IMG/VR virus record: IMGVR_UViG_3300011113_000640 | Location: 62,001-126,000 of that record | DNA length: 64,000 nt | Direction: 5' to 3' (one strand) | Shown: in pieces, positions 9,762 through 53,635 of the stretch | How positions within the stretch are numbered: position 1 is the stretch's first letter | Layout of the letters: each line of letters opens with the position of its first letter | Notes under the pieces: model-generated | Database searches by the model: none | What the model saw: only the letters and a program-made list of their open reading frames with translations | What the model was told of the DNA's origin: nothing | Program-made: the position numbers and the translations under genes

Positions 9762-11333
9762 ATGAGAAATCTAATAAACTTAATAGAAGCGGTGTTATTG
9801 ACCGAAAAAAGTCGCGGTTTATTGTATCGCGAAAAAGGTGATGGTTTTTTTCAAGGCAACAAGGACAACCCCACAGCCGAAATAGTGTTTGATCGGGTGG
9901 ATTATTTTCCCAGTCAGCCCGGTGCTTATGCCAACTATGAAGAAATGGCCGAAGCTGGACAAGAACTGTTTCGACAGTATCCCAATATCATCTGGAGCAA
10001 CAAACCTACCAACGCCAGCAAGGCCTTTGCTATTATAACTTTTGACGGCCCGGCCAAAGGACAAAAAACCTACTACGGTCGATTCTTTGGCGAAATCAAA
10101 CAAGACATGGCCGGACTTTGGAAGAACAATGAACTACCCGGCGGCTGGCAACTCAACAAACAAGTTAGCCTGAAAGGCAGTTACTACAAATTAAAACCTG
10201 TGGACCTGTTTCCTGTCAACAGTACATTTGCCACTCCGGCCGATGCAGTATCGGCCATGGGCTCCAGACCTGGAACCACCCCCGACGAATTGGCCAACAT
10301 TGACAAAATACGTCCTGGTATGGATCAGTTGCTGGGTGGAAAATTGCCTACATTTGAGAACGTAGGCGAAATGTCCACCGCAGTGCGTGATGATCTTGGC
10401 GAAACCATTGGTCCTATAGCTCTTGTTCAAGGTATGATCACCTCGGGTGGAGCAGAAGCTGCAAGAAAAGATATCTTAGGGCCACAAGGTTCATTCTCTG
10501 GCAGTGCCATAAACTTTCCAGCGGCTAAGAACAATGGCCTGGTAGACAGCTATTTGTTACATCCGTCGGGTGTGGAAATTGGTATCAGCTCTAAAGGTGA
10601 AAAAGGTGCTTCTGCATCAGTCAAAAACATTGCCGACGGTATTGTGGCGGCCAGAGACAAAGGCATGGACAAGTTGTTGAAACAATACGCACCACAAGTT
10701 GACGTAATTGAAAAAGTAGGAACCTTAGGATCTGTGGATTTTCCTTTAGTGTTTGGTATCGAGCAAGGCATCATTGATGACACCACCGCACAAACAATCA
10801 AACAGTTGATCAAGAGTGGTGCGACCTCTACAGACGATCCAGAAGTGTTGGCGTTGATGAAAGACATCAAGGCCAAAACTGACAATCCCAGATACAATGT
10901 CGGCTATCATGCTCTGGCTTCGTTGGCACGACGAGTAGCTGTCAACATCAACTCGGATCCCAAGTTTGGTGAAGCCTGCTTGAAATTTTTGAATACCAGC
11001 CCTATCATACAACTACATTTAAATGGTTCAGACAAGGCCGGCACTTACACTGTCACAGGGTTTACATCAAAGTATCCGCCTGACTTCAAAGGCACGGTGG
11101 GTTTGGATGCTGGCAAAGTTTATGCAGCCACGGGCACAATTGGTCGTGTGAGTTTTAGTTACAACGGTGGCGGAGACAAAGACACTGATGTTGAAGTAGA
11201 CGTTGCTCCAGCAAAAACCGCCGCAACCGATTTAGATGTAGTCACACAAAAACGCAGTGCTATCACAGCCGCTCCTGACGAGCCCAAGAAATACGGCACA
11301 GAAAAAACCCTGGGCCGTAAAAGACAACGATAA
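9762..11333 (+). CDS. Hypothetical protein, probably virion-internal; possible PD-(D/E)xK-like nuclease fold
   Basis: 523 aa; MRNLINLIE...LLTE N-terminus; LVDSY...GISSK motif. Confidence 0.55.
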   Translation: MRNLINLIEAVLLTEKSRGLLYREKGDGFFQGNKDNPTAEIVFDRVDYFPSQPGAYANYEEMAEAGQELFRQYPNIIWSNKPTNASKAFAIITFDGPAKGQKTYYGRFFGEIKQDMAGLWKNNELPGGWQLNKQVSLKGSYYKLKPVDLFPVNSTFATPADAVSAMGSRPGTTPDELANIDKIRPGMDQLLGGKLPTFENVGEMSTAVRDDLGETIGPIALVQGMITSGGAEAARKDILGPQGSFSGSAINFPAAKNNGLVDSYLLHPSGVEIGISSKGEKGASASVKNIADGIVAARDKGMDKLLKQYAPQVDVIEKVGTLGSVDFPLVFGIEQGIIDDTTAQTIKQLIKSGATSTDDPEVLALMKDIKAKTDNPRYNVGYHALASLARRVAVNINSDPKFGEACLKFLNTSPIIQLHLNGSDKAGTYTVTGFTSKYPPDFKGTVGLDAGKVYAATGTIGRVSFSYNGGGDKDTDVEVDVAPAKTAATDLDVVTQKRSAITAAPDEPKKYGTEKTLGRKRQR

Positions 11334-11912
11334 TTATTTTTTCAAGTCGCTGACATAGTCGCAGATTTTTAATTCCAAGGCTTCCTCTGCTGACAAGTAT
11401 ATGTCACTGGGTGGCAACAATTTTTCCAAGATGGTATCAGTGTCCAAGCCCGTGGCCGCCCGATAGTGTTCCAGCATGCGCCACTGTATGAGATTGTGCT
11501 CTTTGGCTATGGCAAATAGTTCATGATGCTTGCCTTCGTGGCTGTTGCTATACTGATGGCTTAGTATTGAAGTGTTGGGCGTTAGCACTCTACGTCCAGC
11601 GTGTCCGGCCAAGAATATCATGAGCCCGGCACTGGCTATCACTCCCAGGCCCACGGTCTTGATTGCGATGCTCGACGCTTTCATCACGTCGATCAAAGCA
11701 AAAGCATCTTCCACGCTGCCGCCTTCCGAACATACCATGAGTAAGAGCTCTTTTTTCTTTTTCTTTACCACATGATTTTCCACCAAGATCCATTCAATGA
11801 TGGGCTTGATGGTGTCATCGTTGACTTCGCCCATGAACACATACATGCCGGCTTCCTGCAACAGGCGGGATGGTTCTTTTTCTGAATTATCAGGTTCTTG
11901 TAGTATTGGCAT
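11334..11912 (-). CDS. clpP: ATP-dependent Clp protease proteolytic subunit (ClpP-like)
   Basis: SEGGSV, catalytic Ser in IASAG, His in SHQ, Asp in DIYLSAEEA. Confidence 0.85.
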   Translation of the reverse strand: MPILQEPDNSEKEPSRLLQEAGMYVFMGEVNDDTIKPIIEWILVENHVVKKKKKELLLMVCSEGGSVEDAFALIDVMKASSIAIKTVGLGVIASAGLMIFLAGHAGRRVLTPNTSILSHQYSNSHEGKHHELFAIAKEHNLIQWRMLEHYRAATGLDTDTILEKLLPPSDIYLSAEEALELKICDYVSDLKK

Positions 11913-11996
11913 TTTGGAGTTCTCTACGTATATTATAGCACAAGATTCTGGGCCACTCTAGTACTTATGATAATTCTGTTCAAACGATTTATTCAA

Positions 11997-12024
11997 AAGA
12001 AAACCCCCAATTTGGGGGTTTTTT
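11997..12024. terminator. Intrinsic terminator (bidirectional-type hairpin)
   Basis: AAAACCCCC-AATTT-GGGGGTTTT with flanking A/T tracts, after the 12043 gene. Confidence 0.75.
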
Positions 12025-12042
12025 GTATTACAAACTAGCAAA

Positions 12043-12309
12043 TTAGGCCGCTACTTTGGTGGCCTTTTCTACAGTTTTGGTGATTTCTTTTTGTGTTTCT
12101 TTGGCCACTGCTTCTACAGTTTCAGCAAACTCTTTCACAGCCTTGTTGGTTGTGCGGATCAAGCTGAACTGGGCATCTACCACAGTGTGAGCACTCTTAC
12201 GAACTTGCTCAGGCATGTAGGTAATCATTGTGGTGGCACCTTTGTGCATGTTGTCGATGGCAACAGTTACATCAAATAATTTTGCAAAGTCGATTTTGTT
12301 GAATTCCAT
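12043..12309 (-). CDS. Phasin-like small amphipathic helical protein
   Basis: 88 aa, A/K/E/T-rich helical pattern, AGGAG RBS, PhaR-like box upstream; family call is inference. Confidence 0.5.
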   Translation of the reverse strand: MEFNKIDFAKLFDVTVAIDNMHKGATTMITYMPEQVRKSAHTVVDAQFSLIRTTNKAVKEFAETVEAVAKETQKEITKTVEKATKVAA

Positions 12310-12360
12310 TTTGTTTTCTCCTATGTTGAAATGGGTTACTACTAAACTATTATATATGAA

Positions 12361-12377
12361 TATTTATTGCAGTGCAA
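12361..12377 (-). promoter_or_regulatory. TAAATA promoter abutting a PhaR-like TGC-N3-GCA box
   Basis: + strand TATTTA (12361-12366) followed immediately by TTGCAGTGCAA (12367-12377). Confidence 0.55.
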
Positions 12378-12467
12378 CAATTATTATATATCTATATTAC
12401 TCGTTTTTTAGATTTTGGCAAGATTGATTGCACAAACCCTATGGATAAATAATAAAAAGGATCAAAA

Positions 12468-13205
12468 ATGGCGTCTTACAACAACTACAGCGACAATTGG
12501 TATGTGACCGTAAATGGTGGAACTGGCACAGTTTATCTTGATGCCTCACTACAAGTAAATGGCAACATCACCTATGTCAGTCAGCTAGAGGTCAATGACG
12601 CTTTTATCATAGCAGCCGCCAACAACAGCAGCTCTGCCAATGTAACAGCCGTGGGCTTTTTGGCAGGCAAACCCACCACACCCATCAGCTATGCTGGAAT
12701 CCAATACAACGCCACAGCCGATGCCTGGCAAATATCCACCAATGTTTTTGCCAATGGCGTAGCCAACACAGCCTATGCCAATATCAGTACTTCAACATAC
12801 GGAAACACAAATGTTGTGGCCTTGTTATCGGCATTTGGTAGCAACACCATTTCAACTACCGGAACCATTAATTCCGGCAACATTGTAGCTCCCAATGTCA
12901 TTGTGGGCAACGTTACCACCAATCTAATAAGATCAGACGATTCTTCTTATCTAACTGTGCAAGATGGGTTGAATGTGGTTGGCGACGTTGAAGTATCGGG
13001 TAACATAACCGGTGGTAACACAATATCAGATTCAAGCATAACTCCTTCCAAAGCACTAGCCGACCTTACTGCTACAGATGGTGCACGGGCATTTGTAAAC
13101 GATGCTAACTTGGTGGCTGCAGGTAACTTTGGAAATCAGATCGGCAGTGGTGGATCAAATGTGGTGCCAGTCTGGTCGGATGGCTCCAACTGGTATATAG
13201 GCTAA
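12468..13205 (+). CDS. Structural protein sharing its C-terminal domain with the 2324 fibre
   Basis: Ends ...RAFVNDANLVAAGNFGNQIGSGGSNVVPVWSDGSNWYIG, nearly identical to the end of 2324..5587; TAAATA at 12446. Confidence 0.7.
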   Translation: MASYNNYSDNWYVTVNGGTGTVYLDASLQVNGNITYVSQLEVNDAFIIAAANNSSSANVTAVGFLAGKPTTPISYAGIQYNATADAWQISTNVFANGVANTAYANISTSTYGNTNVVALLSAFGSNTISTTGTINSGNIVAPNVIVGNVTTNLIRSDDSSYLTVQDGLNVVGDVEVSGNITGGNTISDSSITPSKALADLTATDGARAFVNDANLVAAGNFGNQIGSGGSNVVPVWSDGSNWYIG

Positions 13206-13918
13206 ACTGACTGTTCGCGTAGTGTGGCCAGTTTATAACGTTCCAGCAGTTTGATATAAGTCCAACCCAGGTCCCATTCCCATTTCTTCACGCTGAGTTT
13301 GGGACTAGCTGGATCTGCGTGATGATTGTTGTGCAATTCCTCGCCACCAATGAAAAATGCCCAAGGCACTATGTTGGTCGAATAGTCCTTGGTGGCTGTG
13401 TTTCTGTAGCCCCACCAGTGCCCCAGGCCGTTGATGACTCCGGCCGCAAACAAAGGTATCCAGATCATTTGCCAGCCCCAGGCCAACCATCCCCAGGCCC
13501 AGCCAAATATCATGCAATCAATAAAGAACATGATAACAATACCCAACCAGTTGAATCTTGTGTAGATGTTGCGTTCCATCCAGTCGTCAGGTGTGCCTAC
13601 TCCGTACTGTTCAACCATTTTTTTATCTTGTGCAGCCCAGGCATAGTAGAAAGCACCTCCCAGCAAGATCTGCCAGATTCCTTCATTTTGCGGGCTATGC
13701 GGATCACCTTCTTTGTCGGTAAATCTGTGATGTTTTCTATGAGTGGCCACCCACTGCCGAGTGACCATGCCTGTGGTCAGCCACAGCCAAAATCTCATGA
13801 AGTGTGCGACCCTGGGATCGAATGTGACTCCTCTATGTGCTTGACTGCGATGCAAATAAAGTGTGACACAGGCTATGGTGATGTGTGTCATCACCAGGAT
13901 GTAGATGAGTAGGCCCAT
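13202..13918 (-). CDS. Membrane fatty-acid (delta-9-type) desaturase
   Basis: His boxes HRSQAH, HRKHH, HNNHH; GDPHSP; GGEELHNNHH. Confidence 0.9.
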   Translation of the reverse strand: MGLLIYILVMTHITIACVTLYLHRSQAHRGVTFDPRVAHFMRFWLWLTTGMVTRQWVATHRKHHRFTDKEGDPHSPQNEGIWQILLGGAFYYAWAAQDKKMVEQYGVGTPDDWMERNIYTRFNWLGIVIMFFIDCMIFGWAWGWLAWGWQMIWIPLFAAGVINGLGHWWGYRNTATKDYSTNIVPWAFFIGGEELHNNHHADPASPKLSVKKWEWDLGWTYIKLLERYKLATLREQSV

Positions 13919-13925
13919 GTTTTAC

Positions 13926-14480
13926 TTAGCCAAAACTTTCCTGGAATGGCCGCCAGCTTTGTTGCAGAGCCATGTAAAACAAATTGCGTTGCCGTGTGAC
14001 CAGTTCTTGATTCAAGGTGATCCAGGTAGCAGGTGCCAGGGCAATCTTGGTTTCGCTGTCGCCACCTAGATCTCGTGGTTCCAGACCGTGTTTGTCACAC
14101 AGGTGCTTAATGGCTGCATTATGACCCAGGCAGTGCATGAACAGTTCGTTATAGCCACGATTTCTAGCCCAGACTATGCCTTGTGTGAGCAAGTCATCAC
14201 CGATGCCTAGGCCTCTATGATCGCGGTGCACTATGAGCCCAAATTCCACCTGCGCTTTGCTGATTTCGGCTATGTGCAAGGTGCCCAGCCAGCCCTCACA
14301 GTTGGCGGCTATCAGGAAAGCATGACCATTGGGCTCGGCTTCTATTCGTAGCATGAGGCTTTCTATGATGCCCACACCGGTGGTTCCAAAATACATGTGC
14401 TGGGTGTCGGCATCTTGCTCCTGCAACCATTCACCGTAGCGATGATATTTGTCAGGATCTAGAAATTGGGTGGTGTACAT
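13926..14480 (-). CDS. GNAT-family acetyltransferase
   Basis: VHRDHRGLGIG acetyl-CoA-binding motif A; WARNRG...HCLGHNAAI. Confidence 0.85.
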   Translation of the reverse strand: MYTTQFLDPDKYHRYGEWLQEQDADTQHMYFGTTGVGIIESLMLRIEAEPNGHAFLIAANCEGWLGTLHIAEISKAQVEFGLIVHRDHRGLGIGDDLLTQGIVWARNRGYNELFMHCLGHNAAIKHLCDKHGLEPRDLGGDSETKIALAPATWITLNQELVTRQRNLFYMALQQSWRPFQESFG

Positions 14481-14599
14481 TATTTTTTATACATGGCCTG
14501 TGCTCGTTGCACCTGTCCATTGCGTGCCAGATGTGCGGCATAACTGGCCTGTCCAAGATCGCACATGAATTGCCATACTGTTGATAAGATTGATTTCAT
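14480..14599 (-). CDS. Small protein (39 aa, MKSILSTVWQF...) heading the GNAT-desaturase operon
   Basis: Read manually; AAAGGA RBS; TAATG overlap with the GNAT start. Confidence 0.6.
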   Translation of the reverse strand: MKSILSTVWQFMCDLGQASYAAHLARNGQVQRAQAMYKK

Positions 14600-14671
14600 T
14601 ACATTTTCCTTTTGGGTTATTTTCGGACCCAGACTCTTGATCTGAGCTTCTCAGTGAAAACACTGACTTTG

Positions 14672-14696
14672 TATTTATATTGTGCAGTGCCACATA
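14672..14696 (-). promoter_or_regulatory. TAAATA promoter with adjacent PhaR-like box
   Basis: - strand reads TATGTGGCACTGCACAATA-TAAATA; same arrangement as at 12361. Confidence 0.5.
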
Positions 14697-14750
14697 ATAG
14701 CAAAACATAATGATCAAAAGGCAAATAAATATCCTACAAGGAGAACTACC

Positions 14751-14942
14751 ATGTTATCATTCTTAAAGAAAATTTTCGGAGCTAAACCTGCTGAGCCCAC
14801 TGCGGCGCCTTACAAGGTAGAAGAGCCCAGTCAGTTTCCGTTTCCTAAAACTGTCAAGGAAGAAAAGCCGTCTGTAAAGGCCAAAAAACCTGCAACCAAA
14901 AAACCCGCCGCTAAAAAAACTGCTAAAAAATCAGCTCAATAA
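14751..14942 (+). CDS. Small Lys/Ala/Pro-rich basic protein
   Basis: MLSFLKKIFG...KKPAAKKTAKK; AAGGAG RBS; TAAATA at 14726. Confidence 0.7.
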   Translation: MLSFLKKIFGAKPAEPTAAPYKVEEPSQFPFPKTVKEEKPSVKAKKPATKKPAAKKTAKKSAQ

Positions 14943-15221
14943 CAAGCGGGCAAGTCCCACAGTATCAATGGTGACCAACAAGACATAGTTGGCCAGCATG
15001 CCAAAACTCCTGCGTGTCCAGGCGGCCCAGGCCATCATGCCACATCCAGCAATAAACAAAGGATACAAGATCAAGAAAGGTGGATGAGGAATAGTAATGG
15101 CCATGACCACACTACAACCTACACTGATCAACCATGCCGCTACTTCGGCCATGAATCTCACAGGATAGCTGTGATAGTCTTCACAGATCCAACTCCAAAT
15201 GTCCGCAATGGTCTGGGTCAT
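14931..15221 (-). CDS. Small multi-pass membrane protein
   Basis: Three hydrophobic segments; start at MTQTIAD. Confidence 0.65.
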   Translation of the reverse strand: MTQTIADIWSWICEDYHSYPVRFMAEVAAWLISVGCSVVMAITIPHPPFLILYPLFIAGCGMMAWAAWTRRSFGMLANYVLLVTIDTVGLARLLLS

Positions 15222-15391
15222 ACAGGACCACGCAAGAAATACATGGCACAATAGATCACAAATCCCGAGAACAGAATCAAGGCCAATGTTGCAGCCAACT
15301 CCATGCTATCAACATCACCGTCGATCTTGATCATGTGTGTGACAACAAACACACCAAATATCACTACAAGCAAAAAGACGCCGAAGGCCAT
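15218..15391 (-). CDS. Small membrane protein (57 aa)
   Basis: Read manually (MAFGVFLLVV...); coupled to both neighbours. Confidence 0.55.
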   Translation of the reverse strand: MAFGVFLLVVIFGVFVVTHMIKIDGDVDSMELAATLALILFSGFVIYCAMYFLRGPV

Positions 15392-16422
15392 TATACCAAC
15401 CCCAATTCTACTGCACGATTGTAAACCTGCGCACTGGCCAGGTTCTTACCTTTGCTTTCGCACTGTATGTCAAACTGGTTCCAGAAACCCAACACCCAAT
15501 CTGTGACAGCCGGGTTCCAGTAAAAGTCAGAATGTGCTCGTAGTTTTTGTTTTTTGTAGCCGGCTTCTAACAGACTTGCATGATCTGGACGATGCTGAAC
15601 TGCATGGTCCACAAGTACATCTTCACGGCTAACGCTGTAGTGCATAGCAGGACGAACACCGCGCCAGCTGTCCACGACACGTTTGACACGGTCGTCCGTG
15701 GGTGAAATATATTCTCCCGTTTTGATCCAGTGATGGTGAACATCAAGCACAGTAGGAACAATATCACCAAGTTCAAGACAACGATCCAGGCCATGTGTTA
15801 TTTCTTCGTTTTCAAATGTAATACAACTGCGGGCTGTGGGTGATAATCGCGACCAGGCACGGCGTGCACCGGCGGCACCGGCTTTACCTGATATGTGTAC
15901 GTTGATTTTAAAATCCTGGAAGGATTTGCCATAACCCATCCATCTGGCCATATCCGCATGATATTCAAACTCCTCTATGCTTCTATTTACGATTTCTTCG
16001 CTTTCCGACCCCAGCACACAGAACTGTCCAGGATGAAACGACAAACGAACATCCAGTCTGCGTGCGGTTTCACCAATGGGCGCAAAAATCCGTTCACAGT
16101 GATCTTGTATTTCCCTACGTTGCCACCAGGCCTTCCAGTCTTTCTCTGTGTAGCCTTGTAGCATTTCACTGCCCAGACGCACCATTCTACGATTTGGGAG
16201 CAATGAGGCCACACGCTCGATCAGTTTCACAGCGGCCGAGGCGTTGTGGTTCATGATGTCCCACTGGCGTTGTTCGGCTTCGGCTGGATGCTCACGCAAC
16301 CAACGCATGGTGGTTGATCGGCCGTTGAGGTCGCGGTCTTTGGCATTGACTTTCATGCCGCCGCATTCGGACGGATCATTGAGCCATTTGCAACAGAAAC
16401 CAATGCGTTTGAGTGTAGTCAT
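15391..16422 (-). CDS. uvsE: UV-damage endonuclease UvsE/UvdE
   Basis: RIGFCC, RLSFHPGQF, FENEE, LDVHHH, RAHSDF and CESKGKN motifs. Confidence 0.9.
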   Translation of the reverse strand: MTTLKRIGFCCKWLNDPSECGGMKVNAKDRDLNGRSTTMRWLREHPAEAEQRQWDIMNHNASAAVKLIERVASLLPNRRMVRLGSEMLQGYTEKDWKAWWQRREIQDHCERIFAPIGETARRLDVRLSFHPGQFCVLGSESEEIVNRSIEEFEYHADMARWMGYGKSFQDFKINVHISGKAGAAGARRAWSRLSPTARSCITFENEEITHGLDRCLELGDIVPTVLDVHHHWIKTGEYISPTDDRVKRVVDSWRGVRPAMHYSVSREDVLVDHAVQHRPDHASLLEAGYKKQKLRAHSDFYWNPAVTDWVLGFWNQFDIQCESKGKNLASAQVYNRAVELGLV

Positions 16423-16428
16423 GCATAC

Positions 16429-16457
16429 ATTATAGCACAAACTGTGCCAAATGTCAA
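16429..16457 (-). promoter_or_regulatory. Consensus sigma70 promoter for uvsE (probably leaderless mRNA)
   Basis: TTGACA-17 bp-TATAAT, 6 nt before the ATG at 16422. Confidence 0.8.
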
Positions 16458-19804: not shown

Positions 19805-20038
19805 TTAATTGGGTCGGCAGATGTTTGAACTTTTGATGCCATTCAAGGTAAACTGACTCACAAATTTGTCCACATCACTGTGTAAACCGGGCATGCGATG
19901 TGGCAAGAACCACAAGTTTAAATAAGTCCAAGTCCAAGAATCAATCCACCAATTTACGTAATTGTCAACAGGTTGCCGCACAACATCCCAACCAGAAATC
20001 CGTGAAATTTCAGGCCAGTATGTTTGCCAGTAGATCAT
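19805..20038 (-). CDS. Small Trp-rich hypothetical protein
   Basis: 77 aa ORF. Confidence 0.45.
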   Translation of the reverse strand: MIYWQTYWPEISRISGWDVVRQPVDNYVNWWIDSWTWTYLNLWFLPHRMPGLHSDVDKFVSQFTLNGIKSSNICRPN

Positions 20039-20196
20039 GATAAACTGGTGGTCAATACCACCATGCAGGTCAACAGCATAGCGGTCATGATGGCAAATAG
20101 ATTGGTATAATCTCCAAACATGGTTTTGACACTCAAGATTAGAGTAAGGTAAACCACTGTTACCAAAAGCAGGATGTGCGTGAATTGTAGCATCAT
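20035..20196 (-). CDS. Small membrane protein
   Basis: Read manually (MMLQFTHILLL...); two hydrophobic segments; TAAATA upstream. Confidence 0.45.
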   Translation of the reverse strand: MMLQFTHILLLVTVVYLTLILSVKTMFGDYTNLFAIMTAMLLTCMVVLTTSLS

Positions 20197-25514: not shown

Positions 25515-26306
25515 ATGTCAGTGAGCTTTGATTTAATTTCAGATTTGCATGTAGAGACTTGGGACCAATTTGATTGGAGTGATCAGGCCACTTCGCCCTA
25601 TTGCATAGTGGCAGGAGATGTGGCACGCAACCGAGAAAGATTATTACAATCACTTGAGAATCTTGGCCGCTGTTATCCTGGTGGAGTTTTTTATGTAGAT
25701 GGCAATGAGGAACACAAAGATTACATAGACGATCTAGTGGCCAGTTACCGAGATCTTGCCAAGGATATTTCGACCATAAAAAATGTAGTTTACATGCAAG
25801 ACAATGTTGTCATCATCAATGGTGTTGCTCTGTTAGGAACCAATGCCTGGTGGACCTATGACTTTGATCCGGACATTGACGTTGAATCCAGCATACAAGC
25901 CATACAAGATCATTTTGGCATTTCAAATTCAGCAGCCACCAATATTGTAGGAGTGGCCTACAATGATGCCAATTACATGATCAACAGTGTGCGCAAATTA
26001 CAAACTCACAAAGAAGTGGCTACCATAGTTATTGTCAGTCATACTGTGCCAGCACCTTGGATTGTGTCACATGATCCTGATCTAGTAGGAACCTGGAGAT
26101 ACAACGGCATGGGCAACAGTGTTATCACTAGAGCCATCGACGAGGATACCGAAAACAAAATCCATACCTGGTGTTTTGGTCATTATCATAGACCTGTTGA
26201 CCAGAATTTTGGCGGTATCAGATACGTGAGCAATCCACGGGGTCGCGGCGGCACACCATGGAGCCAACCTGTGTATTATCCCAAAAGAATTGTTGTGGAC
26301 TTCTAA
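25515..26306 (+). CDS. Calcineurin-like metallophosphoesterase
   Basis: SDLH, AGD, GNEE (canonically GNH), SHT, FGHYH, SNPRG. Confidence 0.85.
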   Translation: MSVSFDLISDLHVETWDQFDWSDQATSPYCIVAGDVARNRERLLQSLENLGRCYPGGVFYVDGNEEHKDYIDDLVASYRDLAKDISTIKNVVYMQDNVVIINGVALLGTNAWWTYDFDPDIDVESSIQAIQDHFGISNSAATNIVGVAYNDANYMINSVRKLQTHKEVATIVIVSHTVPAPWIVSHDPDLVGTWRYNGMGNSVITRAIDEDTENKIHTWCFGHYHRPVDQNFGGIRYVSNPRGRGGTPWSQPVYYPKRIVVDF

Positions 26307-28836: not shown

Positions 28837-30420
28837 TCAGGCCTGTCCGGTAGATCGTAATCTTTGTTCAATGCTGTCACGTTCAGCATCGCTCAACAAC
28901 TCAGGATCATATTCACCTGTGCTGATTTTTTCTATGAGATGATCTATGTAGTCGTCATTGTAGGCATGGGTATCACTTTGAGACTTGTCTACTTCAATCC
29001 AGGTTTTGCCATTGAACTTGTATAGCACACTGGGCAGTTGATCCACACGCAAGAACATGTCACTCTTGTTGGGGTTTGGTGGAAACGCGGTACCAAACCC
29101 GCGGACTTCACCCATTAATCCTTCAGGACGGTTGTCAGCTTCTAGGCCCAGTTGATCTTGATAGGCAGGATGATTCCAAGGAAAGTCTTCTACCTGTCCT
29201 GTTTGATGCATGCGGCGCCAATGTTTGATTGTTTCTCTTGGGTTGGCTTCTTTCCATTTTCTAATGGCTTCTTTTTCTCGAGGATCAATGCTGTCATCTA
29301 TGTCATCATCTGTTTTAATTTCATCAACAACTGTGTCTACCGGCTGGTTTAATGGAGCATGATCAGCTTCAGGATCTCGGTTAACGATTTTTTTGGCACG
29401 TGTCCACATGCTGTCTAGGCCAGCCAACACTGTCTGTTTAACAGTCTTTGCGGATTTAGCCGGGTCTTGTTCATCGGGCACATCAATTTCCGGGCCGGTC
29501 TGCGTCCATTCGTCTGTGCCCGAACGTATACCTTCAAACTCTCGAGGGAATGGCCATGGCACAGGTTTTTCCTTTTGTTGTTGATCCCAAAATCTGGCAC
29601 GCTCACGAGCTCGATCAAACCAAGATTGGACTTCTGGATCCTTATCGTTGACTTGCGTTTGATTTTCGCGCTCCCATTCAAAGGTCTTGGTGGCGGCCAA
29701 CAACAGGGTCAGGGCCAAGGGATCAAACACTATGACTATGAGTATGATTACCCAACGCACGGCCTTTTCTAACAGATTGGCATCGGGATTGTCACCATAT
29801 ATGAGTGCGGCAATGTATTTGATAGGACCTACTTCGGCTTCAATCTGCCGAGCTTGGCTGGCTATGGGTGCTCGTTGTTCTTGTAGTTTGGTAATCTCGC
29901 TCTGTGCCCGAGAAATGTCGTTCTGTAGATTGCCACGTTCACGGGCCTGACTACGGCGCAGGTTGGCAGCTTTGTCTGCCCCTTGCTCGCTAATGCTACG
30001 ACTCATGGTCTGATCCACGGCTTCATCCATTTGGCGCAGGGCCTTTCTGGCTGCTTCTATGTTGTCACGCTGTGTCCGGATCTTGTCATCGTAGATCTGC
30101 ACCTGGGCCTGTATGTCGCCCGACGGTACAGCCTGATCCAGGTGTGCCTTGGAAAGGAAGCCAAACACGCCCATGCTGGTCAAGACCATGAGTATGGCCA
30201 CAGCGGCACTGAGATATATCTTGTACTGCATTTCTGCACGGTGCCAATACTTGTGCAACCAGAGAGTTGATACCACCTTGCCTACTTCAAGACTGCTACC
30301 AAGAATAACAATGGGCCAGAAGGCCGCGGCAAATATGGCTGTGAGACCAAGTATGCTGTAATAGGCTGCACTCACTGATATGATCAGTGCAGTTGCGAGA
30401 GTTAGTATGCCAAACCACAT
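28837..30420 (-). CDS. Membrane protein with coiled-coil and acidic C-terminal region
   Basis: Three N-terminal TM segments, heptad region, EVGPIKYIA...VFDPLA TM. Confidence 0.7.
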   Translation of the reverse strand: MWFGILTLATALIISVSAAYYSILGLTAIFAAAFWPIVILGSSLEVGKVVSTLWLHKYWHRAEMQYKIYLSAAVAILMVLTSMGVFGFLSKAHLDQAVPSGDIQAQVQIYDDKIRTQRDNIEAARKALRQMDEAVDQTMSRSISEQGADKAANLRRSQARERGNLQNDISRAQSEITKLQEQRAPIASQARQIEAEVGPIKYIAALIYGDNPDANLLEKAVRWVIILIVIVFDPLALTLLLAATKTFEWERENQTQVNDKDPEVQSWFDRARERARFWDQQQKEKPVPWPFPREFEGIRSGTDEWTQTGPEIDVPDEQDPAKSAKTVKQTVLAGLDSMWTRAKKIVNRDPEADHAPLNQPVDTVVDEIKTDDDIDDSIDPREKEAIRKWKEANPRETIKHWRRMHQTGQVEDFPWNHPAYQDQLGLEADNRPEGLMGEVRGFGTAFPPNPNKSDMFLRVDQLPSVLYKFNGKTWIEVDKSQSDTHAYNDDYIDHLIEKISTGEYDPELLSDAERDSIEQRLRSTGQA

Positions 30421-39295: not shown

Positions 39296-39487
39296 TTATT
39301 TTCTGGGCTCCAACTGCACGGCCATGACGGGCTGGCAACGAGTACGGATCTGTTGTTTCTTTTGTTGATATCTGACATGCAATCTTTCCTGGGTGGTCAG
39401 GCAATTGACGTGATGTTGATACCCTCCCCAGATTTCAAACTCTGGACTGGTTACGGATAAATGCACGATCAGGATCCATTCGATCAT
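39296..39487 (-). CDS. Small hypothetical protein
   Basis: MIEWILIVHL start, 5 nt after TAAATA. Confidence 0.55.
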   Translation of the reverse strand: MIEWILIVHLSVTSPEFEIWGGYQHHVNCLTTQERLHVRYQQKKQQIRTRCQPVMAVQLEPRK

Positions 39488-52927: not shown

Positions 52928-53375
52928 CTTCAAATCCTCGTTGTTGAACATATTTAGCCCACTTGACACATTTGGTCAGTTGATTTTCCAAGTGTTTTTT
53001 GTGGATGATCTTGCTTTCCAGCTTGGCCAAAATAGTTTCGCGCAACACAGGATCACGGCTACGATCACCAATGCCGGCTCTAGTGGCTATGTCATGGGTC
53101 AAATAAGCCAATTTGCGGTCGGTTTCTAATAGTTCTCGGGCAGTGTTGTAGGCACGATTTTTGTCGGCTATGCACCAGCTGAGTGCTGAACGAGTAGAGC
53201 TGAATGTGCCCACTTCGGTGGCCGAGCAAAACACTGTATAACCTGTTTTCGCCGGTGAGATCCTGTAGCGATCAAACACTTGATAAATTCCATCGTCATT
53301 TTGGTAAATTACATTGGGCATGAGATCGCGAAATTCCTGGCGGAACATGCGCTCAACATCTTGTTCTCGAATCAT
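52878..53375 (-). CDS. Hypothetical protein
   Basis: MIREQD start. Confidence 0.6.
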   Translation of the reverse strand: MIREQDVERMFRQEFRDLMPNVIYQNDDGIYQVFDRYRISPAKTGYTVFCSATEVGTFSSTRSALSWCIADKNRAYNTARELLETDRKLAYLTHDIATRAGIGDRSRDPVLRETILAKLESKIIHKKHLENQLTKCVKWAKYVQQRGFEDETQRIGRGQPNKTSR

Positions 53376-53635
53376 TTCAATACGTAGTTGGTGACCAGAT
53401 ATATCACAGCGGCTGTCAGGGCACCAATCAGGCCCACACCCCAACCTATGAGTTGGTCTGTGCGTTTTTCACTCATGCGTTGCACCATGTCATGCACTTC
53501 ACGCAACAGGGTTTCCAGGTGGTTGATCTTGCCATCCACATGCTCAAATCTGGCTTCCAGCTGGTTGTAGCGTTCGGCACACAGTTCCACGTGTGCTTCC
53601 AGGCTCTTCTTTTCAATTTCAGTGGCTTCGCTCAT
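53372..53635 (-). CDS. Coiled-coil protein with C-terminal TM segment (XhlA/holin-like architecture)
   Basis: HVELCAERY, heptads and one TM segment. Confidence 0.55.
   Translation of the reverse strand: MSEATEIEKKSLEAHVELCAERYNQLEARFEHVDGKINHLETLLREVHDMVQRMSEKRTDQLIGWGVGLIGALTAAVIYLVTNYVLK

What the first reader, a model, noticed from the sequence alone, without database searches (positions are those of the whole stretch)
12043..14696. Candidate PHA-granule hijacking module: phasin-like gene and GNAT-desaturase operon both carry PhaR-like boxes abutting a phage promoter
Seen: two separate - strand units have the same layout, a TGC-N3-GCA-type inverted repeat directly upstream of TAAATA. These are TTGCAGTGCAA (12367-12377) before an 88-aa amphipathic protein, and TGTGCAGTGCCACA (14681-14694) before a 39-aa ORF, a GNAT and a desaturase. 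Known: the proteobacterial repressor PhaR binds TGC-N3-GCA-like sites upstream of phasin genes and is titrated off DNA by polyhydroxyalkanoate granules. Inference: the phage uses host PhaR to sense carbon-storage status and switches on genes that remodel granules and acyl-CoA/lipid flux. I know of no described host-PhaR-gated phage regulon.
Basis: partly seen in the sequence, partly recalled or inferred. Interest (0 to 1): 0.78.

Follow-up and report, generated by a model that had tools for sequence, protein, structure and literature searches.

The report
Host PhaR-type operators in jumbo-phage promoters
Two neighbouring promoters of an uncultured freshwater jumbo phage carry a conserved palindrome that matches the binding site of PhaR, the bacterial repressor that senses carbon-storage granules, so the phage may read its host's carbon reserves; the small protein behind one of them is not demonstrably a phasin.

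Summary
The window is part of a 320.5-kb T4-superfamily jumbo myovirus from freshwater metagenomes.

I built a weight matrix from 58 palindromes upstream of 35 Burkholderiales phasin genes. It reproduces the published Ralstonia eutropha PhaR motif, YTKNTGCRNYGCANMAR. Its two best hits in the whole phage genome are exactly the two boxes, at 22.5 and 18.6 bits; the third hit scores 13.7. Simulated intergenic DNA gives 0.0075 hits at or above 18.6 bits.

In 35 related loci the box before the 88-aa gene keeps positions ±1-4 and ±7 while its centre varies freely. That is the information profile of real PhaR operators.

Three points count against the idea. A sub-lineage has a 4-nt centre. The GNAT box always has one core mismatch. 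The host is unknown, although the desaturase and a tmRNA tag point to Burkholderiales.

The 88-aa protein is a strongly amphipathic two-helix protein and a conserved core gene. HMM, profile-profile and fold searches do not place it among phasins. The phage has no phaC, phaZ or phaR.

Verdict: a PhaR-type operator is well supported in silico but binding is untested. The phasin and granule-hijacking part remains speculation.

The parts
12364..12380 (-). Operator O1. The 17-mer TTGTTGCACTGCAATAA is centred on 12372 and matches YTKNTGCRNYGCANMAR at 16 of 17 positions. It is the best PhaR-matrix hit in the genome (22.5 bits over 12361-12383).
12383..12388 (-). TATAAT -10-like hexamer 6 nt upstream of the TGC core of O1. 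The geometry resembles that of bacterial phaP promoters, where the gap is mostly 8-12 nt (mode 9, a few at 4-7).
12349..12354 (-). Second TATAAT, 17 nt downstream of TTGCAC (12372-12377, inside O1). This sigma-70-type promoter has O1 covering its -35 element. The TTGCNN-N17-TATAAT arrangement recurs in L001, L007, L010 and L011.
12361..12366 (-). TAAATA overlapping the right flank of O1. It is a late-promoter-like hexamer, but the adjacency is not conserved in relatives.
12043..12309 (-). 88-aa gene. The model shows two amphipathic helices (8-30 and 34-87). It is a conserved core gene, 82-95% identical in relatives, in a family of about 18 clusters at 50% identity. It has no phasin match.
12000..12022 (-). 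Intrinsic terminator (10-bp stem AAAACCCCC...GGGGGTTTT plus a T-rich tail) that closes the 88-aa transcription unit.
14679..14695 (-). Operator O2. The 17-mer ATGTGGCACTGCACAAT is centred on 14687, with core gGC-ACT-GCA, and matches the consensus at 14 of 17 positions. It is the second-best PhaR-matrix hit in the genome (18.6 bits over 14676-14698).
14672..14679 (-). TATAAATA, a T4-late-type -10 element that overlaps the last base of O2. In relatives a TAAATA-type element follows the box within 0-5 nt.
14694..14699 (-). TATTAT -10-like hexamer immediately upstream of O2. Relatives have TATTAT or TATAAT here.
14480..14599 (-). 39-aa ORF, first gene of the operon. Its stop overlaps the GNAT start (ATGA). 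It is conserved at 50-95% identity in relatives, and its function is unknown.
13926..14480 (-). GNAT acetyltransferase, 184 aa (PF00583, E 1e-8). It is a generic member with unknown substrate.
13202..13918 (-). Membrane fatty-acid desaturase, 238 aa (PF00487, E 7e-17), with His boxes HRSQAH, HRKHH and HNNHH. Its nearest cellular homologues are mostly Burkholderiales, at 55-62% identity.
14751..14942 (+). Divergent 63-aa gene that shares the O2 intergenic region. It has a conserved N-terminus MLSFLKKIFGAKP...PYKVE...FPFPK and a Lys/Pro/Ala tail (KKPAxKKPA). Whether it belongs to the module is uncertain.
12468..13205 (+). 245-aa gene that is not part of the module. It is an insertion peculiar to this genome and separates the desaturase from the 88-aa gene; relatives have only about 110 nt there.

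Best explanation
The region is a conserved accessory module of an uncultured freshwater jumbo myovirus. Its layout is: 63-aa gene <- O2 -> orf39-GNAT-desaturase, then O1 -> 88-aa gene. O1 and O2 are operators of the type bound by PhaR, the repressor of phasin genes in betaproteobacteria.

Proposed mechanism. The phage depends on host RNA polymerase, as its nearest cultured relative PA5oct does. O1 lies 6 nt downstream of one TATAAT, covers the -35 element of a second sigma-70-type promoter, and touches a TAAATA hexamer. O2 lies between TATTAT and TATAAATA. In a host without PHB granules, free PhaR would occupy O1 and O2 and hold both units down. In a host loaded with granules, PhaR is drawn onto the polymer surface and both units are switched on. 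The phage would then express a desaturase, an acetyltransferase and a very conserved amphipathic 88-aa protein only, or more strongly, in carbon-replete cells.

What is shown: the motifs, their match to the PhaR operator, their genome-wide uniqueness, their promoter position and their conservation.

What is inferred: that PhaR binds them, that it represses, that the host is a PhaR-bearing Burkholiales-type bacterium (Burkholderiales), and any link of the gene products to granules. The 88-aa protein is best described as an amphipathic helical hairpin of unknown function, not as a phasin.
For: 1. Thirty-four of 35 Burkholderiales phasin genes carry one or two TGC-N3-GCA palindromes upstream. The resulting matrix, wTTKnTGCRnYGCAnMAAw, equals the palindrome YTKNTGCRNYGCANMAR published for R. 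eutropha PhaR from DNase footprints. The same motif precedes phaR genes.

2. The two top matrix hits in the 320.5-kb genome are O1 (22.5 bits) and O2 (18.6 bits), and the next is 13.7. The best site upstream of each bacterial phasin gene with a palindrome scores 14.4-25.5. The nulls give 0.03 and 0.40 hits per genome, and 0.0075 per intergenic set. There were no hits at or above 15 bits in 471 kb around bacterial desaturase homologues.

3. In 35 related loci there are 20 distinct boxes before the 88-aa gene. Eleven of them, covering 24 loci, score at least 15 bits. In these, positions ±1 (R/Y), ±2, ±3, ±4 and ±7 are conserved while the centre takes all four bases. This is the profile reported for PhaR sites, where positions 1-4 and 7 from the centre are conserved.

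4. At the GNAT promoter a near-consensus box (14.0-19.0 bits) recurs at the same place with different sequences.

5. The -10-to-operator geometry resembles bacterial phaP promoters.

6. The left half-site TGTTGC is not enriched in intergenic DNA, so the box is not a general promoter element.

7. Host hints are the desaturase's nearest cellular homologues in Burkholderiales and a phage tmRNA tag ...ANDEVFALAA against ANDERFALAA or ANDERYALAA in Burkholderiales. Seventy-eight of 121 sampled Burkholderiales genomes have Phasin_2 genes, and all 5 genomes tested have PhaR.

8. The phage encodes no PhaR of its own. PA5oct-type phages use host RNA polymerase with -35/-10 promoters.
Against: - No binding data exist, and the co-folding attempt was not run by the tool.
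- Six of the 20 distinct box variants before the 88-aa gene have a 4-nt centre (GATC, GGTC, AACC) with intact half-sites. Several GNAT boxes also have 4- or 6-nt centres. Known PhaR sites have an odd centre, and N3 and N4 boxes coexist in one genome (L003, L152).
- O2 has a core mismatch in nearly every relative. By the published IUPAC rule it is one of 364 genome sites with 3 mismatches.
- Each phage promoter has one operator, whereas bacterial phaP promoters have two, about 57 bp apart.
- The host is not identified.
- The module has no recognisable PHA gene.
- Whether a bound repressor would block a T4-late-type promoter is unknown.
Confidence: 0.5

Rival explanations
1. The boxes are operators for a phage-encoded or other host regulator, and their likeness to the PhaR operator is coincidental. 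A dimeric DNA-binding protein of the phage would time the two units during infection.
For: N4-centred palindromes with perfect half-sites form a consistent sub-lineage and coexist with N3 boxes in the same genome. A protein other than PhaR might tolerate that better. There are only two sites per genome, as for a local autoregulatory switch. About half of the large proteins tested have no annotation, so an unknown regulator could be hidden.
Against: Eleven or more specified positions, and the position-by-position conservation profile, coincide with PhaR sites. The -10/operator geometry resembles phaP promoters. No candidate regulator gene is linked to the module in any relative. The phage has no PHB_acc_N domain.
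Confidence: 0.25
2. The boxes are only core promoter sequence. TTGCAC or TTGCAA would be the -35 hexamer of a sigma-70 promoter for the 88-aa gene, and a GC-rich spacer would precede a late promoter for the GNAT operon. No repressor would be involved.
For: TTGCNN-N17-TATAAT is kept in five sequence variants upstream of the 88-aa gene (window, L001, L007, L010, L011). PA5oct-type phages use TTGAC/TATAATA promoters.
Against: A -35 hexamer does not explain conservation of the right half-site GCA and of A at +7, nor the R/Y rule around a free centre. O2 has no -10 element at 16-18 nt. TGTTGC, TTGCAC and GTTGCA are not enriched in intergenic DNA. The consensus scan did not list this promoter among its top matches.
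Confidence: 0.1
3. PhaR does bind, but the sites act as decoys. Hundreds of replicating phage genomes would titrate PhaR off the host chromosome and derepress the host phasin/PHA regulon. Regulation of the phage genes would be secondary.
For: The operator evidence is the same as for the main explanation. O1 is as strong as the best bacterial sites. Jumbo phage genomes reach high copy number (general knowledge).
Against: A decoy need not sit on promoter elements of two specific units, nor keep that position across relatives. Two sites per genome make a weak sponge. Nothing tested here speaks for it directly.
Confidence: 0.05
4. Chance resemblance with no function.
For: A single 18.6-bit hit is expected 0.4 times per genome under a Markov null.
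Against: Both hits are intergenic and promoter-proximal in one module. The intergenic null gives 0.0075 hits, and 0 of 400 simulations had two. The boxes are conserved across about 20 sequence variants.
Confidence: 0.03

Closest known systems
PhaR-phaP promoter/operator switch of Cupriavidus necator (Ralstonia eutropha) H16 and other Burkholderiales
   Same: The palindrome is the same (YTKNTGCRNYGCANMAR), with an odd centre and the same conserved positions (±1-4, ±7). The operator is placed just downstream of a -10 hexamer or at a -35 element. The gene behind the best site encodes a small amphipathic helical protein.
   Different: The sites lie in a virus, with one operator per promoter instead of two about 57 bp apart. 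Some relatives have a 4-nt centre. The regulated genes are a desaturase, a GNAT and an 88-aa protein with no detectable homology to phasins. Binding by PhaR has not been shown.
Host nutrient regulators acting on phage auxiliary genes: PhoB boxes before cyanophage pstS/phoA, NtcA sites in cyanophage promoters, LexA or Fur boxes in temperate phages (recalled from general knowledge, not retrieved here)
   Same: It works like these systems. A virus places the operator of a host sensor-regulator on its own promoters, so that accessory genes follow the host's physiological state.
   Different: The sensor would be PhaR, which reads the presence of polyester storage granules rather than phosphate, nitrogen, iron or DNA damage. 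I found no report of PhaR sites in any phage.
Phasins (Pfam Phasin_2 PF09361; PhaP1 of C. necator)
   Same: It is a small, abundant, strongly amphipathic alpha-helical protein whose promoter carries a PhaR-type operator. Three of 15 distant family members give sub-threshold Phasin_2 hits.
   Different: It is half the usual size (88 aa against 167-192 aa for the phasins fetched here). No hit lies above threshold, profile-profile probability is 17.6%, and no phasin appears among the fold neighbours.
T4-type late promoters (TATAAATA) and PA5oct-type jumbo myoviruses
   Same: The terminase is 53% identical to that of PA5oct. TAAATA is about ten-fold enriched in intergenic DNA, lies close to start codons, and has no conserved -35 element.
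   Different: Here two such promoters have a palindromic operator directly upstream. A late sigma factor was not searched for.
Cyanophage-encoded lipid desaturases (recalled from general knowledge)
   Same: A phage carries a membrane fatty-acid desaturase with three His boxes as an accessory gene.
   Different: This one is the short acyl-CoA/lipid desaturase type, of betaproteobacterial affinity. It is co-transcribed with a GNAT and a 39-aa ORF in a phage-specific operon; none of the 79 bacterial loci has that neighbourhood.

Membership tests
PhaR operator (betaproteobacterial type) | Palindrome matching YTKNTGCRNYGCANMAR, or the matrix built from phasin-gene promoters | tested here: met
   O1 matches 16/17 positions and scores 22.5 bits. 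O2 matches 14/17 and scores 18.6 bits. The best site upstream of each bacterial phasin gene with a palindrome scores 14.4-25.5 bits. O1 and O2 are the two best hits in 320.5 kb.
PhaR operator (betaproteobacterial type) | Conservation profile: positions 1-4 and 7 from the centre conserved, centre free | tested here: met
   In the 11 distinct phage boxes scoring at least 15 bits, ±7 and most of ±2-3 are invariant, ±4 is nearly so, ±1 is always R/Y, and the centre is A, C, G or T (criterion).
PhaR operator (betaproteobacterial type) | Single central nucleotide (TGC-N3-GCA spacing) | tested here: inconclusive
   The feature is met in the window and in 14 of the 20 box variants. Six variants have TGC-N4-GCA, and some GNAT boxes have N4 or N6.
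PhaR operator (betaproteobacterial type) | Position on the promoter (at the -35 element, or at the -10/transcription start) | tested here: met
   This was judged by sequence only. There is a TATAAT 6 nt upstream of the O1 core, against mostly 8-12 nt (mode 9, a few at 4-7) in bacteria. O1 covers TTGCAC-N17-TATAAT, and O2 lies between TATTAT and TATAAATA. No transcription start site was mapped.
PhaR operator (betaproteobacterial type) | Two operators about 57 bp apart, as at phaP promoters | tested here: not met
   There is one high-scoring site per phage promoter, whereas most bacterial loci have two.
PhaR operator (betaproteobacterial type) | Bound by PhaR protein and released by PHB granules | not testable with these tools
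   Complex prediction did not fold the protein-DNA job. EMSA or footprinting is needed.
PhaR operator (betaproteobacterial type) | A PhaR gene in the cell where the DNA is read | tested here: inconclusive
   The phage has none. The host is unknown, and hints point to Burkholderiales. There, 5 of 5 tested genomes have PhaR and 78 of 121 have phasins.
Phasin (Pfam Phasin_2 PF09361 and other phasin families) | HMM match above the curated threshold | tested here: not met
   The 88-aa protein has no phasin family hit at E up to 1 in Pfam or NCBIfam. Three of 15 relatives hit Phasin_2 below threshold, best E 0.0014.
Phasin (Pfam Phasin_2 PF09361 and other phasin families) | Profile-profile or iterative sequence link to phasins | tested here: not met
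   hhalign of A2 against 35 phasins gives 17.6% probability, against 4% for the reversed control. A1 gives 8% against 9%. No phasin-annotated protein appeared in two database searches.
Phasin (Pfam Phasin_2 PF09361 and other phasin families) | Fold similarity to phasin structures or models | tested here: inconclusive
   Searches of PDB, AFDB clusters, BFVD, ESM Atlas and AFDB Swiss-Prot found no phasin, and all E values exceeded 0.3. A helical hairpin is too generic for a negative result to be decisive.
Phasin (Pfam Phasin_2 PF09361 and other phasin families) | Amphipathic helices; binding to PHA granules | tested here: inconclusive
   Amphipathicity is met (mean moment 0.41 against 0.27-0.34 for three phasins, z = 5). 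Granule binding cannot be tested here.
T4-type late promoter | A TATAAATA-like -10 element without a -35 element, enriched before genes | tested here: met
   Seventy of the 159 TAAATA sites lie in the 7% of the genome that is intergenic. Distances to the ATG peak at 10-13 and 24-30 nt. There is no upstream consensus.
T4-type late promoter | Phage late sigma factor (gp55-like) present | not tested
   I did not search for it.
GNAT acetyltransferase / membrane fatty-acid desaturase | Pfam domain above threshold; the three His boxes of the desaturase | tested here: met
   PF00583 scores 35.8 bits against a cut-off of 20.7. PF00487 scores 62.6 bits against 29.7. The His boxes HRSQAH, HRKHH and HNNHH are visible in the translation.

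The most novel reading that the evidence does not exclude
A lineage of freshwater jumbo phages has wired a small gene module to the host's PHB-granule sensor PhaR. The conserved 88-aa amphipathic protein would be a viral granule-surface protein, acting as a phasin analogue or a competitor of PhaR and phasins. The Lys-rich 63-aa protein might add a PhaM/PhaF-like DNA tether. Together these would let the phage detect and exploit the host's carbon store during infection.
Probability: 0.15. Interest if true: 0.85.

Novelty: new variant of a known kind. Interest (0 to 1): 0.64.

Why it matters
Phages are known to borrow host sensors for phosphate, nitrogen, iron and DNA damage to time accessory genes. 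A phage reading PhaR would add carbon-storage status to that list. PhaR is released from DNA by physical contact with polyester granules, so this would be the first case in which a phage reads a storage organelle.

PHB-accumulating Burkholderiales are abundant in fresh water and central to bioplastic production and wastewater phosphorus removal. Such a switch would therefore bear on how viruses choose when to exploit well-fed cells, and on phage problems in PHA bioprocesses.

The claim is directly testable with existing C. necator genetics (delta-phaR and delta-phaC strains) and purified PhaR, even though the phage is uncultured.

Tried and rejected
- Sigma-54 reading of TGGCAC/TTGCA. The spacing is wrong, so I rejected it by inspection.
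- A MotA-box-like general middle-promoter element. TGTTGC and related words are not enriched in intergenic DNA.
- Box inherited with the desaturase by gene transfer. There is no matrix hit at or above 15 bits in 80 bacterial desaturase loci (471 kb), and no GNAT sits next to the bacterial desaturases.
- The strict IUPAC consensus as a genome-wide test. It is too strict even for true phaP sites and gave 4-5 matches against 1-3 in the reversed-pattern control in two bacterial genomes. I used the matrix instead.
- Mapping transcription starts from metatranscriptomes. The runs are kept as contigs of relatives, and the alignments stop at the ORF edge (12315-12319). They show that the 88-aa gene is present at high depth in RNA libraries, but the runs were chosen with that gene and DNA carry-over cannot be excluded.
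- Co-folding a PhaR dimer with O1 DNA. The tool did not fold it, so it gives no evidence either way.
- A fusion of orf39 with GNAT in L003. The 242-aa call is an out-of-frame upstream extension.
- 5'-UTR hairpins after O2. These are only modest (z = -2.2 and -1.4) and I did not pursue them.
- Cultured relatives carrying the 88-aa gene. There are none in 50,697 phage records.
- Naming the host.


Full report
**What the window is.** The window is bases 62001-126000 of a single 320,541-bp viral contig. The contig has 45.9% GC, a CheckV completeness estimate of 93%, and about 390 genes, nearly all on the - strand. PHROG hits to tail sheath, baseplate wedge, portal, terminase and family-B DNA polymerase mark it as a jumbo myovirus. 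Its terminase is 53% identical to that of Pseudomonas phage PA5oct and 43-51% identical to those of Phosso, Atu_ph07 and GAP32. DNA of the region occurs in freshwater, riverine, estuary and aquaculture metagenomes. No cultured phage carries the 88-aa gene.

**The observation.** Both motifs are at the stated coordinates on the - strand.
- Upstream of the 88-aa ORF (12043-12309) the sequence reads ...TATAAT-AA-TTGTTGCACTGCAATAAATA-TTCATA-TATAAT...
- Upstream of the 39-aa ORF, GNAT and desaturase it reads ...TATTAT-GTGGCACTGCACAA-TATAAATA...
- Pfam confirms the GNAT (PF00583) and the fatty-acid desaturase (PF00487, three His boxes). It gives no family for the 88-aa or 39-aa proteins.
- TGCACTGCA occurs only at these two places in the genome.
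- TAAATA is a credible phage promoter hexamer. Seventy of its 159 copies lie in the 7% of the genome that is intergenic. It peaks 10-13 and 24-30 nt before start codons, and nothing is conserved upstream of it, as for T4-type late promoters.

**Synteny.** The 88-aa protein has 192 clusters of 76-95% identical homologues in metagenomes. Contigs of 319-339 kb keep the order UvdE, 63-aa gene (opposite strand), small ORF, GNAT, desaturase, 88-aa gene.
- In those relatives the 88-aa gene follows the desaturase after about 110 nt.
- The 245-aa + strand gene at 12468-13205 is an insertion peculiar to this genome. A metatranscriptome contig of a relative joins 12406 to 13200 directly.

**The key test.** I fetched phasin (Phasin_2) genes from Burkholderiales genomes. 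I reached these genomes through the bacterial homologues of the phage desaturase.
- Thirty-four of 35 phasin genes have one or two TGC-N3-GCA palindromes upstream. Where there are two they are typically about 57 bp apart. The proximal core lies mostly 8-12 nt (mode 9) after a -10 hexamer.
- The same motif precedes phaR genes.
- The matrix from 58 sites reads wTTKnTGCRnYGCAnMAAw. This is the palindrome YTKNTGCRNYGCANMAR that a 2025 study deduced from the DNase footprints of R. eutropha PhaR. That study notes that positions 1-4 and 7 from the centre are conserved (PMC12849132).
- Scanning the whole phage genome with this matrix puts the two boxes first and second, at 22.5 and 18.6 bits, with the third hit at 13.7. 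The best site upstream of each bacterial phasin gene with a palindrome scores 14.4-25.5.
- First-order Markov genomes give 0.03 hits at or above 22.5 bits and 0.40 at or above 18.6 bits.
- For sequences with the composition and total length of the 22.2 kb of intergenic DNA, the expectation is 0.0075 hits at or above 18.6 bits. None of 400 simulations had two.
- There were no hits at or above 15 bits in 471 kb around 80 bacterial desaturase homologues.
- One caveat applies. The training sites were collected with the TGC...GCA pattern, so the core columns are partly circular. The flanks (T at -7, A at +7, R/Y next to the centre) are independent.

**Conservation.** I examined 35 loci from relatives. 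They hold 20 distinct best boxes before the 88-aa gene.
- Eleven of these, covering 24 loci, score at least 15 bits. In them ±7, most of ±2-3 and the R/Y pair at ±1 never vary, and ±4 varies once per side. The centre is C, T, G or A, and positions ±5-6 drift. This mirrors the PhaR profile.
- Three more variants keep a perfect TGC-N3-GCA core with poorer flanks.
- Six variants have a 4-nt centre (GATC, GGTC, AACC) with intact half-sites. Several of these add a second, weaker N3 box about 32 bp downstream.
- At the GNAT operon a near-consensus box recurs at the same place with different sequences: gGC-ACT-GCA, gGC-AAC-GCA, TGC-ACC-aCA and TGt-GAT-GCA, scoring 14.0-19.0 bits. It is always followed within 0-5 nt by (A)TAAATA. 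Some relatives have N4 or N6 centres there.
- GNAT identity falls to 41-48% and desaturase identity to 62-66% in many of these loci. The box conservation is therefore not due to recent common ancestry.

**Promoter context.**
- O1 (12364-12380) starts 2 nt after a TATAAT (12383-12388). Its TGC core lies 6 nt from that hexamer, which resembles the bacterial phaP geometry.
- Its left half, TTGCAC, is 17 nt from a second TATAAT (12349-12354). That arrangement is kept in five sequence variants.
It is not conserved: L160 has TAAGTA and L007 has TTTTTT there.
- O2 (14679-14695) lies between TATTAT and TATAAATA.
- TGTTGC and related words are not enriched in intergenic DNA, so the box is not a general promoter element.
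- PA5oct, the nearest cultured relative, uses host RNA polymerase with TTGAC/TATAATA promoters. A host repressor could therefore act on such promoters.

**Host.** The host is unknown.
- The desaturase's nearest cellular homologues (55-62% identity) are mostly Burkholiales-order genera such as Rhizobacter, Rubrivivax, Piscinibacter, Ideonella, Aquabacterium and Cupriavidus (order Burkholderiales), followed by Xanthomonadales.
- The single better hit (63%) is a 2.6-kb contig binned as Bacteroidetes. It carries orf39-GNAT-desaturase and is evidently a phage fragment.
- The phage encodes a tmRNA-like gene with the tag ...ANDEVFALAA. Four Burkholderiales genomes have ANDERFALAA, ANDERYALAA or ANDERYSLAA.
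- One sampled Burkholderiales genome of 1.7 Mb and about 46% local GC, similar to the phage, has PhaR, two phasin genes and AT-flanked operators.

**The 88-aa protein.**
- AlphaFold2 on 21 homologues gives a helical hairpin (helices 8-30 and 34-87, pLDDT 80).
- It is strongly amphipathic.
- It is one of the most conserved genes of the region, at 82-95% identity.
- Contigs from four metatranscriptomes cover it at summed depths up to 150. However, the runs were selected with this gene and DNA carry-over cannot be excluded.
- An exhaustive profile search of 1.84 billion representatives finds only 18 clusters, nearly all 70-91 aa long and unannotated.
- A second search with distant members finds no phasin-annotated protein.
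- Pfam gives no phasin hit for the window's protein. Three of 15 family members hit Phasin_2 below threshold (best E 0.0014), alongside equally weak hits to apolipophorin, ApoC-I, spectrin and syntaxin.
- hhalign against 35 phasins gives 17.6% probability, against 4% for a reversed control. With the shallower alignment it gives 8% against 9%, and in a different register.
- Foldseek against PDB, AFDB clusters, BFVD and AFDB Swiss-Prot, and the ESM Atlas shape search, return only generic helical hairpins.
- The language-model atlas lists a Phasin_2-containing cluster as the nearest annotated one, at a score (0.82) that shuffled proteins often reach.
- The conclusion is that it is amphipathic and could bind a hydrophobic surface, but membership in a phasin family is not supported.

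**Other PHA genes.** Six-frame searches of the phage genome find no Phasin_2, PHB_acc_N (PhaR), PhaC_N, Esterase_PHB or PHB_depo_C.

**Literature.** Two full-text searches found no report of PhaR sites in phages or of phage phasins. A palindromic motif proposed as a PhaR site defines a PHA modulon in Accumulibacter. PhaR-type regulons beyond phasin genes are therefore already discussed in bacteria.

**Assessment.** That O1 and O2 are real, selected cis-elements is very likely. The best available explanation is that they are operators read by host PhaR, at about 0.5. Supporting it are the motif identity, the conservation profile, the promoter position, the genome-wide uniqueness and the host hints. 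Against it stand the N4 variants, the imperfect O2, the single-operator layout, the unknown host and the lack of any binding data. The granule-hijacking function of the gene products is an attractive but unsupported extension.

Noticed in passing
G000:C1:277949-278305 (- strand; outside the window), with 7 tRNA genes at 270341-279075: Aragorn calls a permuted tmRNA with the tag ANAANDEVFALAA. Four Burkholderiales genomes have ANDERFALAA, ANDERYALAA or ANDERYSLAA. A phage-borne tmRNA whose tag mimics the betaproteobacterial degradation tag is a host hint and is interesting in itself.
   Followed up: partly
whole genome; in the window for example 20035-20196, 26303-26306 region, 28837-30420, 39296-39487, 53372-53635: TAAATA lies 10-13 nt before the ATG for 25 of 92 promoter-proximal sites. 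With a T4-late-type start about 6-8 nt after the hexamer, these mRNAs would be leaderless or nearly so.
   Followed up: partly
window 14751-14942 (+): This conserved 63-aa gene is divergent from the GNAT operon. Its N-terminus is MLSFLKKIFGAKP...PYKVE...FPFPK, followed by a KKPAxKKPAxKK tail. The tail is reminiscent of the histone-H1-like DNA-binding tails of the granule proteins PhaM and PhaF (from memory), but such tails are common. The ORF list's 86-aa GTG-started version overlaps box O2 and is probably not real.
   Followed up: partly
window 12468-13205 (+): This 245-aa Asn/Gly/Thr-rich gene has its own TAAATA 22 nt upstream. It is inserted between the desaturase and the 88-aa gene only in this genome. 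Relatives and one RNA contig join 12406 directly to 13200. It has no family hit and looks like a fibre or spike protein.
   Followed up: partly
window 13202-14480 versus loci L003-L012 and L150-L168: GNAT and desaturase exist as two allelic groups, at about 80% and 93% identity to the window in one group and about 44% and 65% in the other. The groups do not track the identity of the flanking 88-aa gene (82-95%) or of UvdE, which indicates cassette exchange inside the module.
   Followed up: partly
L013 (CAIRZD010000009.1, 2674 bp, binned as a Bacteroidetes MAG): This contig carries orf39-GNAT-desaturase in phage order, with a box-like ATGTTGCGTTGCG followed, after about 14 nt, by ATAAATA upstream. 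It is probably a fragment of a related phage that was mis-binned.
   Followed up: partly
window 11334-11912 (-) and relatives L001 4348-4974 and 7346-7939: ClpP-family protease genes lie next to the module, with two paralogues in some relatives. Together with the tmRNA this suggests that the phage manipulates tagged-protein degradation.
   Followed up: no
window 14600-14671 (-) and L004 2412-2468: Stem-loops lie at the predicted 5' end of the orf39-GNAT-desaturase mRNA (TCAGTG...CACTGA in the window; CAGTAGA...TCTACTG in relatives). They are structurally conserved with different sequences, but their fold z-scores are modest (-2.2 and -1.4).
   Followed up: partly
window 15391-16440 (-): This UV-damage endonuclease (UvdE) gene is the only part of window 11000-16000 with nucleotide similarity to cultured phages (Erwinia pEa_SNUABM and Dickeya JA29 jumbo phages, 71-74%).
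   Followed up: no
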